Source of the DNA: Octopus sinensis
Lineage: Eukaryota
Direction: 5' to 3'
Assembly (NCBI RefSeq): GCF_006345805.1
Contig: NC_043009.1
Location: 40,114,001-40,178,000 of the forward strand
Length of the DNA stretch: 64,000 nt
Shown: positions 4,376 through 60,885 of the stretch, one piece after another
How the letters are laid out: each line of letters begins with the position of its first letter
How positions within the stretch are numbered: the stretch's first letter is position 1
Translations under genes and position numbers: made by a program
Notes under the pieces: model-generated
The model's database searches: none
Seen by the model: the letters and a program-made list of their open reading frames with translations, nothing else
What the model was told of the DNA's origin: nothing

Positions 4376-4447
4376 GGCCGGATAAATGAAGAGATGGTGG
4401 CGTGGATTTCCACCGCGGCATCCGAAACTCGGAGTTTTATCACGGCT
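4376..4447 (+). ncRNA. Type I hammerhead ribozyme motif with C3>A core substitution
   Basis: Stem I GGCCGGATAA/TTATC(A)CGGCT; core ATGAAGA 4386-4392; stem II GATG...CATC; GAAA 4424; stem III ACTC-G-GAGT; GUU site at 4436; 3' end runs into (AT)n. Confidence 0.65.
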
Positions 4448-4531
4448 ACCGAATAATAGTTACATATTACATTTACATATATATATATATATATATATAT
4501 TATATATATATATATATTATATATATATATA

Positions 4532-5138
4532 TAATTTAATAAGTAAAATATATGCATATATACATACATATATGTACGTACCTACATCTACATGTATATA
4601 TACATGCATATATATATATATATATATATATATATATATATATATATATATGAGAGTACAGGACACCACAAATAAACGTAGAACACAACGAGAAACGAAA
4701 ACATAAAAGCAACTAGGAAACGGACTTTTTTAACAACGTAAAAACAGAGTACAAGACAAACAATACAAGGAATATTCCCCTTCATCAGCTGTCCCTGGAT
4801 CGACTCAATGCACCTTCGAAACACGCATTGAGTCGATCCAGGGACAGCTGATGAAGGGGAATATTCCTTGTGTTGTTTGTCTTGTACTCTGTTTTTTCGT
4901 TGTTAAAAAATGTCCGTTTCCTAGTTTGTTATTATGTTTTCGTTTCTCGTTGTGTTCTACATTTATTTGTGGTGTCCTGTACTCACACACACACACACAC
5001 ACATACATACGTATATATATATATATATTATATATATTATATATATATATATATATATATATGCATGTATATATACATGTAGGTGTAGGTACGTACATAT
5101 ATGTATGTATGTATGCATATATTTTATTTATTAAATTA
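4532..5138. repeat. ~600-bp near-perfect palindrome (fold-back element)
   Basis: Arms 4532-4811 and 4825-5138 are reverse complements; 13-nt loop ACCTTCGAAACAC; each arm includes a microsatellite and about 80 bp beyond it. Confidence 0.95.
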
Positions 5139-6796
5139 TTGTATGACTGAGCGCCAACGCGTCGTTTCGTTTCGTTTCTTTCCTTTCTTTTCTCCAAGTA
5201 AGTTTATATATATATATTTATATGTATGTATGTATGTATGTATGTATGTATGTATGTATGTATGTATGTATGTATGTATGTATGTATGAATGTACGTGTA
5301 ATGTAGTCGAATATCAAAGTAAAAATGGTTTTGATAATCCAGAAGAAATACTTCATATGTTCTCTGCATATGAAGATCACTAGTTTAACAGATATGTTTT
5401 GTGAAATATTTAGTAATCGGGCTATTCCGAATTCCTCAAGCTGTCACCAGTCAAATTTGTTAAACCGCGGTATGGTTGTCAAGGGAAGTTGTTATATAGG
5501 TACGAAATGATATAGAAAATACACTTAGATAATGGATTTTAGACATTCCCTTTTATTAAAGCTTAAATATATTTCCGATATATCTTGGAGTGGTCTATTT
5601 CCATAATCGAGTGAAGTCCGATACCGTCATCTTCCCCATAGCCACAACACACTGACTGCCAGAAGAAAAGAATTTGACCAAATTTGTACTGTCATCTATT
5701 TTAAGCAGCTATTTGACCAGTGATAGACAAGCTACAGGGAAGGGAAACAGCGATAGCAGTGCGTAGCAGAGAATTGTGAGGCCGACCATGAAAAGAATTG
5801 AAATCTAATACCTTCCTAAATTGTTGAGGTTTGAAGCTGACAACAGGGAAAGTTTCATTGAGAATTACTACTAAGTTTCGAAACATCAGAAGTGGAGAAG
5901 TATCTATATGTTATAACGCAAAAACATAGAATAGAAACTTGTTGAGTTATTTAAACCGGAAGAACAATTCACTATCCACTATATATGAAGATAATCGGCT
6001 TCCAATAAACAATACAGATATACAGAATTCATAGAGAAACCATAATATAATACAAGATAGTAACAGAAGGAAAACTGAAAATAGGGCGAGATTAATACAT
6101 TAAGTAAAGAATAGTTTGAAAATTTAAAAGAATTTATAGTGATGAAATTGTAAGTATAATTAGAAATCAATATTCGAACTAATTAAATATGCTGTTAACA
6201 CTAAAGTATTCTTTGATACCTGCTGCAAATGCTGCTTCTATACCCAGTTGCTTGTATATTACTGGTTAGATACTTACTTAAAATAGAATACCTATCATTT
6301 TCAAATAATATTATTTTGGTAAAATTTTAATTCTTTTTTGTCGCAGTCAATTTATTGTCGCTCAGTGTGAGACTGTTCAGTGTTTTTTTTCTGTCGATCG
6401 AACATGAATGAATTAATTAATCAATACGATTGAACTATCGAATCTGACTGTCTAACATGTATCAGAAATATATGTGAGCCTTAATGAAAATAAATATATA
6501 AAATCCATGGGTATATTTTACATATACGTATGTGTTATATCTATCTATCTATCTATCTATCTCTCCATATATACACATATATATAATATATATATATATA
6601 TATATATATTATATATATATATATATATATAATATATATATATATCTATATATATATTATATATATATATATTATATATATATATATATATATTATATTA
6701 TATTAATATATATATAATATTAATAGCGTTCAGTTAATCACTATACGAATCCATCATTTTTTGCTGAATTGTCTTATTGACCAGTTTCGTTTTTTC

Positions 6797-6880
6797 ACTT
6801 TCCTGAAGAGAAGATTGCGGTGTATACAATTTATTCTTCTGAATAGTATCAGTGGAATTTTCGAAACATGTGACGAAAGT
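6797..6880 (+). ncRNA. Decayed hammerhead ribozyme, same family as 24565
   Basis: ACTTTC-CTGAAGA-GAAGAT...ATTTTC-GAAAC-ATGT-GAC-GAAAGT; U16.1 is mutated to A; flanked by (AT)n on both sides. Confidence 0.65.
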
Positions 6881-7416
6881 AAAAATATTTGATTTATCCT
6901 TGCGTTAAACGCCATTTATTTATTCATGTTATATACATATATATATATATATATATATATACATATATATGGATCTAGATTTTTCATTCGCAAAATATGC
7001 ATTTTGGAAAAGACATTAAAAAATCAGAAAATCGGCTATAATAATAAAGTGCTCCAGTCTAATTGCTATTAAGATATGATGTTGTGGAGAAAAAAATTGG
7101 AGGAAAAAGTTACAGAGGTTTAAAAATCGAAAAATTGTGTATTTTTAGCCAATAGCGGGACAGAAATTTTCTGCGTTGAACAGAGCGGATTCAACTTTCA
7201 TGTTGTACCCTGTGAAATTTATAGTTTAGCGTCTGTGAAATGACCACTTTATTGTAGGTTTCTAAATAAGCTGAAATACCTTATTTCATTTAGGTTTCTA
7301 AATAAACAGAAATAACTAATCACATCAGCATGTATCATCTTACTGTTTCTTTTGTCTCTTCATTGATTGTATGTTTTTATTATTTGTTTAAAATTTGTTA
7401 TTATAATATATTTGTC

Positions 7417-59589: not shown

Positions 59590-59974
59590 TCTCTCTCTAT
59601 ATAAACGGCAGTTTGTCTGTGCGTGTTTCTGTGTGTCTGTTTGCTTGTACCCTCACCCTGACCACGGCTTTCAACCGATTCTGATGAAACTTGACACACA
59701 CATAGCCCAATGTCATAATTCAAAACTAACGCAGCGAAAATTTTGAAAAGTTCCCCCAGTTCTGAAAAAAATCGATAAATTCGACATGGGGTCGAGAATC
59801 AGAAACACGAACCACAAACTGTCTAGGGGACGCACTCACACCTTTTTTAGATCTCAAAAAAAAATTTACCATCATTTTTTTCCATTTTTTTGCTATTTTT
59901 TGGCTATAACTCTCTAAAAATGCTTTATAGTTATTTCCCTTACAAACCCGAGCAACGCCGGGCGATACTGCTAG
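59590..59974 (+). mobile_element. Non-autonomous Helitron
   Basis: 5' TC after A, subterminal hairpin CCCGAGC-AAC-GCCGGG at 59947-59962, 3' CTAG followed by T (A|T target, no TSD). Confidence 0.85.
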
Positions 59975-60152
59975 TATATATATATTATATATATATATAT
60001 ATATAATATATATACGGAGATGTACTCGCATAGCAAGTGATTTGATCTGAGATCGTGTGCTGGAACGAAAACAATTGCAGCGTGGAAGGCGTTTGTAAGC
60101 CATTTAAGAAACACACAAAAGCCGTTCGATTCACTTCAACATTTAAGTTTAA

Positions 60153-60202
60153 TTTGTCAAAATATTTTCGTCGCTAAAATCCGCGACCTCTTCACTGACA
60201 AA
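60153..60202 (-). ncRNA. Hammerhead variant with G at position 3
   Basis: TTTGTCA-GTGAAGA-G-GTCGC(GGATTTTA)GCGAC-GAA-AATATT-T-TGACAAA; perfect 7-bp stem I and 5-bp stem II; the host fragment 60015-60215 ends at (AT)n. Confidence 0.6.
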
Positions 60203-60317
60203 AATCCGCGCTGCAGCACCTGTTTTACGTACCGGAACCATGTGGTTGGTAAGCAAGCTACTTCTCACACAGCCACTCCTGCGACTAAATATATATATAT
60301 ATTCTTTTATTCTGTTA

Positions 60318-60885
60318 TTCTTTTGTTTCAGTCATTTGAGTGCGGCCATGCTGGAGTACTGTCTTTAGTCGGACAAATCGTGCCCACCACTTATTCTTTG
60401 TATGTCTAGTACTTATTTCTATCAGTTCTTGTGCCAAACCGCTAAGTTACGGGTACGTAAACACACCAACATCGGATTTCAGGTGATGGTGGGGGGACAA
60501 ACACACACACACATATATACACATATATAAAACAAAAGACAGAAACTTAGAGACAACAAGCATGTGTATTAATTTGACATTCGGGAAAAGTGTTTGACGT
60601 TTCGAGCTTACGCTCTTTGACAGGAATGAGAGGGGGGGAAATGGAATGAGAGTGAGAGAAAAAAAGAGAGAGTGAGACAGAAAACAAAGGTGTCTTGATT
60701 AACGGTTTCACTCGTACGTCAGGTTTTCACTCGGTTTCCATTTACGAAATTCACAAACAAACTATAAGTCGGCCCAGAGTTAGAGTTGAAGACACTTGTC
60801 TCAGGAGCTGGAAAGTGAAATTAAACTCGAAACCAGGCGGGTGCAAATCGATTTTCTTAATCACAGAGCCATGCCTGCACCTCAT
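60318..60885 (-). mobile_element. Family-B SINE split by a PLE-like fragment
   Basis: 3' half 60318-60510, insert about 60528-60700, decayed 5' half 60715-60885. Confidence 0.7.
60593..60626 (-). ncRNA. Hammerhead-like motif with a non-canonical core and GNRA-capped stem II
   Basis: TTC-CTGTCAAA-GAGC(GTAA)GCTC-GAA-ACGT-C-AAA; stems II and III are clean, core and stem I deviate. Confidence 0.45.

What the first reader, a model, noticed from the sequence alone, without database searches (positions are those of the whole stretch)
4376..60626. Window-wide system of hammerhead-bearing fold-back elements from many unrelated families
Seen in sequence: about 19 HHR motifs or half-motifs in 64 kb. 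Four palindromic elements (14832, 24391, 38091, 43847) carry an HHR on each arm in the same geometry: ribozymes face outward, 5' ends meet at a 9-43-nt spacer, and 3' ends point outward, meeting (AT)n at both ends (14832), one end (24391, 43847) or neither (38091). Their sequences are unrelated, so the architecture arose repeatedly. Established: minimal type I HHRs with palindromic stem III are a hallmark of Penelope-like elements, and PLEs often carry inverted 5'-truncated repeats. Inference: these are non-autonomous PLE derivatives formed by fold-back or template switching near the ribozyme. Whether the double-ribozyme palindrome is itself a mobilised unit is the open question.
Basis: partly seen in the sequence, partly recalled or inferred. 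Interest (0 to 1): 0.9.

Follow-up and report, generated by a model that had tools for sequence, protein, structure and literature searches.

The report
Inverted hammerhead-bearing Penelope-type retroelement fragments
Several short pieces of hammerhead-ribozyme-carrying retrotransposon, three of them head-to-head mirror-image pairs, sit in (TA)n microsatellites of this invertebrate DNA; the ribozyme motifs are real, but the layout matches the known insertion pattern of Penelope-like elements and is not a new system.

Summary
A type I hammerhead (HHR) descriptor (CUGANGA, helix II, GAAA, short palindromic helix III, non-G cleavage base, helix I) finds 5 intact-core motifs. Dinucleotide shuffles give 0.02, and 540 permuted decoy cores on the real sequence give at most 1 each. 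All five lie in three palindromes: A 14832-15270, B about 24390-24700, D 43847-44290. In each, the ribozymes face outward and the 3' ends abut TA-rich tracts.

The fourth palindrome (38091-38367) has no recognisable HHR. A fifth (4533-5137) has only CTGATGA half-motifs. About 8 HHR-derived motifs are credible, not 19. Rfam's hammerhead models do not match them.

A and D split the internal microsatellite of one SINE family, and uninterrupted copies in the window act as empty sites. Family B has a diverged solo copy (6723-6935) between two (TA)n tracts, so a single arm can insert alone.

All of this matches published Penelope-like element (PLE) behaviour: strong 5' truncation, an adjacent inverted truncated copy, AT/(TA)n targets, an HHR near the end, internal RT initiation with a "tail", and cleavage and extension of both target strands in vitro.

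No RT/GIY-YIG parent was found and no outside copies could be retrieved. I class these as new members of a known kind, of low-to-moderate interest.

The parts
14832..15270 (.). Element A: a 439-bp palindrome centred at 15051, with arms about 95-98% complementary. (TA)n lies at both ends. It is inserted in the internal microsatellite of a SINE copy.
   Evidence: (I6). SINE flanks and uninterrupted copies.
15093..15137 (+). A right-arm HHR: helix I 5 bp, CUGAAGA, helix II UGCA/UGCA flanked by U.U, GAA, AGUACU, cleavage base A. The cleavage site lies about 140 nt from the 3' end of the arm.
   Evidence: Descriptor hit. Not detected by Rfam.
14959..15009 (-). A left-arm HHR remnant: the core reads CUGAAGG (A9->G), with a 6-nt insertion after the cleavage base.
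24390..24700 (.). Element B: an older palindrome with arms about 87% complementary. BLAST extends the palindrome to 24379-24712 into TA-rich flanks. A 22-23-nt spacer lies at about 24534-24556.
24565..24650 (+). B right-arm HHR, intact: helix I 5 bp, CUGAUGA, 57-nt helix II closed by GAAGA/UCUUC with a terminal 7-bp hairpin, GAA, ACAUAUGU, cleavage base C.
   Evidence: Strict descriptor hit. Conservation against the solo relative.
24438..24520 (-). B left-arm HHR: the core is intact, but a 3-nt deletion removes the base of helix II.
6723..6935 (+). Solo, non-palindromic relative of family B, about 70% identical, lying between two (TA)n tracts. The HHR-like part is 6798-6882: core CUGAAGA, helices I and II kept, U16.1->A.
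   Evidence: No inverted partner within +/-700 nt.
43847..44193 (.). Element D palindrome: arms 43847-44007 and 44033-44193, 95-97% complementary, with a spacer of about 25 nt. It is inserted in the microsatellite of another copy of the same SINE family.
   Evidence: (I17).
44071..44156 (+). D right-arm HHR, intact: CUGAAGA, 59-nt rod-like helix II closed by GUACU/AGUGC, GAA, ACAAUUGU, cleavage base A.
43884..43969 (-). D left-arm HHR, intact: CUGAUGA, cleavage base U.
44194..44290 (+). Extra 3' segment of about 97 nt, present only on the right arm of D and lying between that arm and (TA)n. It is absent from the uninterrupted SINE copies. I read it as a second, more distal reverse-transcription start (a 'tail').
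60016..60224 (-). Solo insert with an HHR-like fold at 60150-60197: GUGAAGA (C3->G), an unpaired G followed by 5-bp helix II, AAUAUU, cleavage base U, 7-bp helix I. The 3' end meets a TA run. The 5' end abuts a SINE head that is cut short at its 3' side.
   Evidence: The MFE fold equals the HHR junction, z = -3.1. No Rfam hit.
38091..38367 (.). Palindrome C: arms 92-94% complementary, spacer 3-9 nt. It has no HHR, no (TA)n at either end and no clear target-site duplication. Its origin is undetermined.
4533..5137 (.). Palindrome E, 605 bp. Each arm has 77 nt of complex AT-rich sequence, an (AT)n/(TG)n tract and 165 nt of inner sequence. The central loop is 13 nt. It carries only CTGATGA plus a helix-II-like hairpin on each arm (4788 on -, 4848 on +), with no GAAA.

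Best explanation
These are retrotransposition products of Penelope-like elements (PLEs) or of short RNAs that PLEs mobilise. They come from at least four unrelated families: A, B, D and the 60169 element.

Each arm is the 3'-terminal 135-280 nt of an element transcript. It runs from 15-40 nt upstream of a type I hammerhead, through the ribozyme, to a reverse-transcription start site about 40-60 or about 135-145 nt downstream of the ribozyme cleavage site.

Proposed mechanism:
1. The PLE GIY-YIG endonuclease cuts AT-rich DNA. Here that is mostly the (TA)n tracts inside or at the ends of SINEs.
2. The cut DNA primes reverse transcription.
3. The mirror-image doublets form during integration. Either both cut target strands prime cDNA synthesis and the two short cDNAs are joined head to head, or the enzyme switches from the RNA to the nascent cDNA (snap-back).

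In these copies the ribozymes are cargo. The two ribozymes of a doublet lie on opposite strands, so they cannot pair through helix III within one transcript. A read-through transcript would fold into a long hairpin. Three of the eight copies already carry inactivating changes in the catalytic core or at position 16.1, and a fourth has lost the base of helix II.

Shown: the motifs, the geometry, the insertion sites and the solo copy. Inferred: the enzyme, the template and the order of steps.
For: HHRs are real:
- 5 hits against 0.02 in shuffles, and against at most 1 for any of 540 decoy cores on the real sequence.
- Helix III is 2 bp plus a palindromic 2-4-nt loop. B and D have G10.1-C11.1. 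The 60169 copy has the unpaired base 5' of helix II. These are the traits listed for metazoan and PLE HHRs in PMC4209133.
- Between B and its 70%-identical relative, core and helix columns are 43/49 identical against 16/37 elsewhere (P = 1.5e-5), and 98% of pair cells are paired.

They are insertions:
- The flanks of A and D are the two halves of one SINE family. Uninterrupted copies lie at about 19.1-19.5, 31.9-32.25 and 57.8-58.0 kb.
- No SINE sequence is duplicated or inverted, so the palindrome boundaries equal the insert boundaries.

Target:
- 4 of 10 insert ends lie within 5 nt of a perfect (TA)>=6 tract. Such positions make up 5.7% of the window (P = 0.0017). By eye, four more ends abut imperfect TA runs.

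Asymmetries expected from a retro-insertion and not from a symmetric DNA element:
- D has a 97-nt extension on one arm only.
- B's spacer has a collinear 9/10 match (TGTCTTGTTG against TGTCTTATTG) to the sequence upstream of the HHR in the solo relative, in the orientation of the right arm.
- Family B also exists as a solo copy.

Literature:
- PLE insertions are strongly 5'-truncated, often with an inverted 5'-truncated copy adjacent. They carry the HHR in the pseudo-LTR near the end, have a 30-40-bp tail at one end and favour (TA)n (PMC8557442).
- A purified PLE protein cleaves and extends both target strands, prefers AT-rich sites and starts reverse transcription internally at two sites downstream of the HHR (PMC11167929).
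- Pairs of minimal HHRs 100-700 bp apart on opposite strands were already noted in Schistosoma (PMC4209133).
Against: - No RT or GIY-YIG coding sequence was found in the window. The tests were weak: 10 ORFs against Pfam and a six-frame scan for the YxDD and GIY..YIG motifs.
- No homology to a named PLE could be tested.
- Rfam's hammerhead models give no match even at E<=10, so ribozyme identity rests on my own descriptor and its controls.
- All doublets have nearly equal arms (spacers 1-40 nt). Independent truncation of two cDNAs would not predict this. It fits snap-back, or a short template with a fixed 5' end, better.
- D's tail is about 97 nt, against the 30-40 bp described for PLEs.
- The support for B's spacer being templated is a short match. 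It is not significant without the collinearity argument (484 of 2000 shuffles score as well).
- Only one window was available, and no second copy of any doublet exists to compare junctions.
Confidence: 0.65

Rival explanations
1. The double-ribozyme palindrome is itself a non-autonomous mobile unit. Once formed, it is transcribed, and the whole hairpin RNA is reverse-transcribed from the recognition and start site in its sense arm. Identical palindromes then spread to new (TA)n sites.
For: - Arms are nearly equal in all doublets, and the outer ends are symmetric in A and B.
- Three of the five HHR-bearing inserts in 64 kb are doublets.
- The insert boundaries equal the palindrome boundaries at the SINE empty sites.
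Against: - No doublet has a second copy in the window.
- The only family with two members has one solo copy and one doublet.
- D's outer ends are unequal, by 97 nt on one side.
- A long perfect hairpin RNA is a poor template and a likely substrate for RNA silencing (general knowledge).
Confidence: 0.12
2. The palindromes were made by the host after insertion. Replication template switching or fold-back repair at hairpin-prone (TA)n tracts converted a solo insert into an inverted duplication.
For: - (TA)n tracts flank the elements.
- Palindrome E includes its microsatellites and 77 nt of outer sequence in both arms, as a host-driven inverted duplication would.
Against: - For A and D the flanking SINE halves are neither duplicated nor inverted. 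The palindrome stops exactly at the insert ends.
- A host process would not respect element boundaries three times.
Confidence: 0.1
3. These are fold-back or MITE-type DNA transposons that target TA and happen to carry hammerhead sequences.
For: - The structure is palindromic and the size is 280-440 bp.
- Insertion is at TA-rich sites, where a TA duplication would be invisible.
- A Tc1/Tc3-type transposase remnant lies in the window.
Against: - Full HHRs in three unrelated families are not expected in MITEs, and they are a PLE/retrozyme hallmark.
- There is a solo single-arm copy of family B.
- D has a one-sided 97-nt extension.
- The termini are unlike Tc1/mariner ends (by eye).
- Palindrome C, the only one outside a TA tract, shows no target-site duplication.
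Confidence: 0.05
4. The palindromes are assembly artefacts: chimeric fold-back long reads.
For: PLE tandem and inverted structures are known to disturb assemblies (PMC8557442). Reads could not be inspected.
Against: - The arms differ by 2-13%, including indels. Examples are the 6-nt insertion in A-left, the 3-nt deletion in B-left, and the different N7 and cleavage bases in the two D arms.
- An artefactual fold-back of one molecule would give identical arms after polishing.
- The unique flanks differ on the two sides.
Confidence: 0.04

Closest known systems
Penelope-like element insertions (Penelope/Poseidon, Neptune, Hydra clades): pseudo-LTR with HHR and an adjacent inverted 5'-truncated copy
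   Same: - Type I HHR near the element end with a short palindromic helix III.
- Extreme 5' truncation.
- Head-to-head inverted copies with 3' ends outward.
- AT-rich or (TA)n targets.
- A one-sided terminal extension.
- Many sequence-unrelated families in one genome.
   Different: - Both copies are tiny (135-280 nt) and nearly equal in length. The usual pattern is a short inverted copy next to a long or full-length one.
- No RT/GIY-YIG ORF lies nearby.
- The tail in D is about 97 nt, not 30-40 bp.
- B and D have an unusually long (57-59 nt) rod-like helix II.
Metazoan non-LTR retrozymes (Cervera & de la Pena 2020, PMC7229834; Li et al. 2026 preprint, 10.64898/2026.07.22.740005)
   Same: - Short (170-400 nt), AT-rich, non-coding units.
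- They carry a type I HHR whose helix III is 1-2 bp plus a palindromic loop.
- They are proposed to derive from PLE pseudo-LTRs, and solo monomers are common.
   Different: Retrozymes are defined by head-to-tail tandem copies that yield circular RNAs. Here there is no tandem arrangement, only inverted doublets and solo copies. No evidence on circular RNA is available.
L1 'twin priming' inversions and template-switch chimeras of non-LTR retrotransposons
   Same: Both target strands, or a template jump, are used during target-primed reverse transcription. This gives inverted segments joined internally.
   Different: - L1 twin priming gives an inversion of part of a single copy with unequal segments, not a near-perfect palindrome of the 3' end.
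- The enzyme family is different (APE endonuclease against GIY-YIG).

Membership tests
Hammerhead ribozyme, type I (metazoan/PLE style) | Conserved core CUGANGA ... GAAA, with a non-G base at the cleavage position 17 | tested here: met
   Exact in A-right, B-right, B-left, D-right and D-left. Mutated in A-left (A9G), the 60169 copy (C3G) and the solo B relative (U16.1A).
Hammerhead ribozyme, type I (metazoan/PLE style) | Three helices around the core in type I order, with helix I open | tested here: met
   Helix I is 4-7 bp and helix II has at least 4-5 closing bp. Enrichment over shuffles and over 540 decoy cores is shown. The 60169 copy folds into this junction as its MFE structure.
Hammerhead ribozyme, type I (metazoan/PLE style) | Helix III of 1-2 bp capped by a palindromic 2-4-nt loop, which allows dimers | tested here: met
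   The sequences are AGUACU, ACAUAUGU, ACAAUUGU and AAUAUU. The criterion comes from PMC4209133.
Hammerhead ribozyme, type I (metazoan/PLE style) | Match to a curated covariance model (Rfam Hammerhead families) | tested here: not met
   No hit at gathering score, and none at E<=10 on short stretches around A and the 60169 copy. The regions of B and D were not searched separately.
Hammerhead ribozyme, type I (metazoan/PLE style) | Self-cleavage at the predicted site | not testable with these tools
   This needs in vitro transcription of monomeric and dimeric constructs.
Hammerhead ribozyme, type I (metazoan/PLE style) | Covariation or selective conservation of the helices within a family | tested here: inconclusive
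   Only 3 sequences were available. 98% of pair cells are paired, there are 2 one-sided changes and no double compensatory change. Core and helix columns are much more conserved than the rest (P = 1.5e-5).
Penelope-like element | ORF with a telomerase-like RT and a GIY-YIG endonuclease | tested here: not met
   None was seen in the window: Pfam on 10 ORFs and a six-frame scan for the YxDD and GIY..YIG motifs. This is a weak test, and a parent could lie elsewhere in the genome.
Penelope-like element | HHR in the terminal (pseudo-LTR) region near the insertion's 3' end | tested here: met
   The cleavage site lies 41-58 or 136-144 nt from the 3' end in all six measurable arms (coordinates).
Penelope-like element | 5'-truncated copies, with an inverted truncated copy joined head to head | tested here: met
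   Seen in A, B and D. The criterion comes from PMC8557442.
Penelope-like element | AT-rich or (TA)n target preference | tested here: met
   (P = 0.0017). SINE empty sites.
Penelope-like element | Optional 30-40-bp tail at one end, from a second RT start site | tested here: inconclusive
   D has a one-sided extension, but it is about 97 nt. A and B have symmetric ends.
Penelope-like element | Sequence homology to a known PLE pseudo-LTR or consensus | not testable with these tools
   No eukaryotic repeat library or source genome was available. Metagenome scans with D and B patterns found nothing.
Non-LTR retrozyme | Head-to-tail tandem copies of a 170-400-nt HHR unit | tested here: not met
   No direct repeat of any HHR arm exists in the window.
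MITE / fold-back DNA transposon | Fixed terminal inverted repeats with a target-site duplication, and the same boundaries in all copies | tested here: inconclusive
   A duplication cannot be read inside (TA)n, and none is seen at C. The solo B relative and D's one-sided extension argue against fixed symmetric boundaries.

The most novel reading that the evidence does not exclude
Short, equal-armed hammerhead doublets may be a regular and distinct outcome of PLE integration. They could form by snap-back of the nascent cDNA, or by both strands copying a short RNA with a fixed 5' end about 15-40 nt upstream of the ribozyme. If so, they would be an in vivo record of two-strand priming. Some of them might be re-mobilised as hairpin units, or act as sources of hairpin RNA that silences the parent family.
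Probability: 0.12. Interest if true: 0.55.

Novelty: new member of a known kind. Interest (0 to 1): 0.25.

Why it matters
- For annotation: most hammerhead hits in a genome like this are probably dead fragments of Penelope-type retroelements. They should be counted per insertion, not per motif.
- For mechanism: doublets with clean empty sites are natural footprints that fit the in vitro finding that a PLE enzyme cuts and extends both target strands. They also show SINE-internal (TA)n tracts acting as landing pads.
- The equal arm lengths and the two classes of distance from ribozyme to 3' end give measurable quantities. A genome-wide census could use them to choose between two-strand priming and snap-back synthesis.
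- None of this changes what is known about the element class.

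Tried and rejected
- Rfam at gathering score and at E<=10, on the whole window and on short stretches. No hammerhead family appeared. The many sub-threshold miRNA rows are microsatellite artefacts.
- A covariance model of the window's own HHRs. I abandoned it because MAFFT misaligns the cores of unrelated families and custom alignments cannot be supplied.
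- Single-sequence folding gave no useful signal except for the 60169 copy, as expected for ribozymes that work as dimers.
- Outside copies: two exact-pattern scans of metagenome contigs, one for family D and one degenerate pattern for family B, found nothing.
- Source organism:
  - Three exact-protein look-ups of window ORFs found nothing.
  - A homologue search with a Tc1-like fragment found nothing.
  - ARAGORN found no tRNA.
  - From memory, the tRNA-like SINE resembles an abundant octopus SINE. That was not tested.
- Pfam on the ten longest ORFs outside simple repeats gave no domains.
- Candidates I judged no better than chance: 8981(+), 12196(+), 15518(+), 27162(+), 41916(+), 43436(-), 46102(-), 57040(-). 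The relaxed classes they fall in are not enriched over chance: the loose class without a palindromic helix III gives 0.65 hits per shuffled window, and one-mismatch cores multiply the decoy rate. None has an inverted partner.
- A hammerhead in palindrome C or E: rejected after reading both strands.

Full report
**Context.** The window is AT-rich (about 35% G+C) and full of (TA)n, (TG)n and (TATG)n tracts and interspersed repeats. It has no recognisable cellular gene among its longer ORFs and one decayed Tc1/Tc3-type transposase. It looks like intergenic or intronic DNA of an invertebrate animal. From memory, the abundant tRNA-like SINE resembles an octopus SINE, but I could not test that (all came back empty).

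**Are the hammerheads real?** Rfam gives no hit at gathering score. It also gives no hammerhead hit at E<=10 on short stretches around two of the best candidates.

I therefore wrote the published architecture as a descriptor: helix I, CUGANGA, helix II, GAA, a helix III running from A15.1 to U16.1 that is either a hairpin or a short palindrome, a non-G base, and the return strand of helix I.
- The strict form gives 3 hits against a mean of 0.03 in 100 dinucleotide-preserving shuffles.
- Requiring a palindromic helix III and tolerating one imperfect pair per helix gives 5 hits against 0.02.

Shuffling destroys native palindromes, so I also kept the real sequence and permuted the core letters. 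Of 540 decoy core pairs, 526 give no hit, 13 give one and none gives two. The true core gives five.

The five hits are the two arms of B, the two arms of D and the right arm of A. Helix III is always 2 bp plus a palindromic 2- or 4-nt loop (AGUACU, ACAUAUGU, ACAAUUGU). B and D have the G10.1-C11.1 pair. These are the traits listed for metazoan and PLE hammerheads by Cervera & de la Pena (PMC4209133).

Relaxing the core by one mismatch adds three credible relatives:
- A-left, with A9G and a 6-nt insertion;
- a solo relative of B at 6798-6882;
- a solo copy at 60150-60197 on the - strand. It has C3G, an unpaired G before a 5-bp helix II and a 7-bp helix I. Its minimum-energy fold is exactly the hammerhead junction (z = -3.1).

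The other candidates fall in relaxed descriptor classes that are not enriched over chance: the loose class without a palindromic helix III gives 0.65 hits per shuffled window, and one-mismatch cores multiply the decoy rate. So about 8 hammerhead-derived motifs are supported, not 19. The bare CTGANGA count (31 against 21.5 expected) is only mildly raised. Eight of the 31 lie in elements A, B, the solo B relative, D and E, which roughly covers the excess.

**The palindromes.** Self-comparison finds five short-spacer palindromes that are not simple repeats:
- E, 4533-5137
- A, 14832-15270
- B, about 24390-24700
- C, 38091-38367
- D, 43847-44193

Arm identities are about 95, 95-98, 87, 92-94 and 95-97%, with indels. 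There is no similarity between elements.

C has no hammerhead. The nearest thing needs two changes at invariant core positions and has no helix I or III.

E has CTGATGA followed by a helix-II-like hairpin on each arm, but no GAAA. Its palindrome includes a microsatellite and 77 nt of further sequence in each arm.

**They are insertions into (TA)n.** The left and right flanks of A, and likewise of D, are the two halves of one SINE family whose middle is a (CA)n(TA)n tract. Copies at about 19.1-19.5, 31.9-32.25 and 57.8-58.0 kb are uninterrupted. No SINE sequence is duplicated or inverted, so the palindrome boundaries are the insert boundaries. This argues against a host-made inverted duplication for A and D.

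Of ten ends of hammerhead-bearing inserts, four lie within 5 nt of a perfect (TA)>=6 tract. Such positions make up 5.7% of the window (P = 0.0017). By eye, four more ends abut imperfect TA runs.

**Signs of a retro-insertion, not a symmetric DNA element.**
- D's right arm runs about 97 nt further than its left arm before reaching (TA)n. That segment is absent from the uninterrupted SINE copies. The left arm ends where the sequence reads UUAUUAUAAU, so priming by a TA tract at an internal site is plausible (inference).
- Family B has a second, 70%-identical member at 6723-6935. It is solo, lies between two (TA)n tracts and shares the 3' end.
- B's 22-23-nt spacer carries TGTCTTGTTG, 19 nt upstream of the right-arm core. 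The solo copy has TGTCTTATTG, 24 nt upstream of its core. The match is not significant in a free local alignment. At a collinear position I estimate its chance probability at roughly 1e-3 (my own estimate, not computed). So the spacer is probably the continuation of the longer right arm.
- The distance from the cleavage site to the 3' end falls into two classes: 41, 52 and 58 nt (D-left, B, solo B), and 136, 140 and 144 nt (D-right, A, 60169).

**Selection on the ribozyme.** Between B-right and the solo relative, core and helix columns are 43/49 identical against 16/37 for the remaining columns (Fisher P = 1.5e-5). Of the pair cells, 98% are paired, with two one-sided changes and no double compensatory change in three sequences. 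This points to conservation of the ribozyme during the family's history. It is not proof by covariation.

**Comparison with what is known.**
- Craig et al. 2021 (PMC8557442) describe PLE insertions as highly 5'-truncated, often with an inverted 5'-truncated copy adjacent at the 5' end. They also report a hammerhead in the pseudo-LTR, an optional 30-40-bp tail at one end and a bias for microsatellites such as (TA)n.
- Frangieh et al. 2024 (PMC11167929) show that a purified PLE protein cleaves and extends both target strands and prefers AT-rich sites. It starts reverse transcription at two internal sites about 85-90 nt downstream of the hammerhead cut site. Ribozyme cleavage is not needed for insertion in vitro.
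- Cervera & de la Pena 2014 already noted pairs of minimal hammerheads 100-700 bp apart on opposite strands.
- Recently active Penelope families are reported in Octopus vulgaris (PMC13282606). This is relevant only if my guess about the source is right.

The doublets here are thus a miniature form of a known pattern. Two differences stand out. Both copies are very short and nearly equal in length. B and D also have an unusually long (57-59 nt) rod-like helix II.

**Mechanism.** I consider it most likely (0.65) that these are PLE-type target-primed insertions and that the doublets form at integration.

Two sub-variants fit the data and cannot be separated here:
- both cut strands prime cDNA synthesis and the two cDNAs are joined head to head;
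- the enzyme jumps from the RNA to the nascent cDNA (snap-back).

The nearly equal arms favour snap-back, or a short template with a fixed 5' end. The one-sided tail in D fits either.

The 60169 insert begins about 27 nt upstream of its ribozyme. It abuts the first ~57 nt of a SINE head that is cut short at its 3' side, and the rest of that SINE is not found beyond the insert. A template-switch chimera would look like this, but that is inference.

Within a doublet the two ribozymes lie on opposite strands. They cannot dimerise within one transcript, and a read-through RNA would form a long hairpin. I therefore regard the ribozymes as cargo in these copies.

**Rivals.**
- A mobile palindromic unit (0.12).
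- Host-made inverted duplication (0.10). This may be the better reading for E.
- A TA-targeting fold-back DNA transposon (0.05).
- Assembly artefact (0.04). The diverged arms argue against it, but I could not check reads.

**Verdict.** These are new members of a known kind, of low-to-moderate interest. What is missing is a genome-wide census and a link to an RT/GIY-YIG parent.

Noticed in passing
window 3073-3772 (+): Decayed, frameshifted Tc1/Tc3-type DNA transposase. The first piece matches Pfam HTH_Tnp_Tc3_2 (E = 2.5e-11). The next two pieces read like the DDE region by eye but gave no Pfam hit.
   Followed up: partly
window 14598-15451, 19047-19560, 31830-32266, 43601-44520, 57024-58005, 60226-60516: An abundant tRNA-like SINE family, on the - strand. 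It has a head of about 170 nt and a second part of about 190 nt, separated by a (TA)n(CA)n tract. The two parts also occur in the reverse order across another (TA)n, so the unit boundaries are unclear. These tracts are the landing sites of elements A and D. ARAGORN calls no tRNA.
   Followed up: partly
window 16313-16918, 35756-36130, 48827-49180; also 3901-4078, 34040-34470, 36951-37295: A second repeat family of about 175-205 nt. It often occurs in short head-to-tail arrays of 2-3 units (periods about 205, 190 and 173 nt) and in inverted pairs. My descriptor found no hammerhead in it.
   Followed up: partly
window 4533-5137: A 605-bp palindrome (E) whose arms each contain a microsatellite and 77 nt of outer sequence. 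It is bordered by (TA)n on the left only. It may be a fold-back that ran past an insert's end, or a host-made inverted duplication.
   Followed up: partly
window 38091-38367: A 277-bp palindrome (C) with a 3-9-nt spacer. It has no hammerhead, no microsatellite flank and no clear target-site duplication. An ATT lies within a base of each boundary. Its origin is unknown.
   Followed up: partly
window 27155-27215 (+): A possible canonical-style type I hammerhead: CUGAAGA, helix II GGC/GCC with one mismatch, GAAA, a 4-bp hairpin helix III (ACCA-GAU-UGGU) and cleavage base A. Helix I is weak. It falls in the descriptor class without a palindromic helix III, which is not enriched over shuffles (0.65 hits per shuffled window).
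   Followed up: partly
window 56513-57239 and 31812-32263 / 33529-34049: Large imperfect inverted repeats (77-91% identity) built from SINE copies in opposite orientation around microsatellites.
   Followed up: no
window-wide, e.g. 41442-41512, 51730-51811, 52987-53068: Hundreds of sub-threshold Rfam matches to miRNA families (mir-297, mir-3149, mir-466, mir-1277). All lie on TA/TG microsatellites and are composition artefacts.
   Followed up: yes
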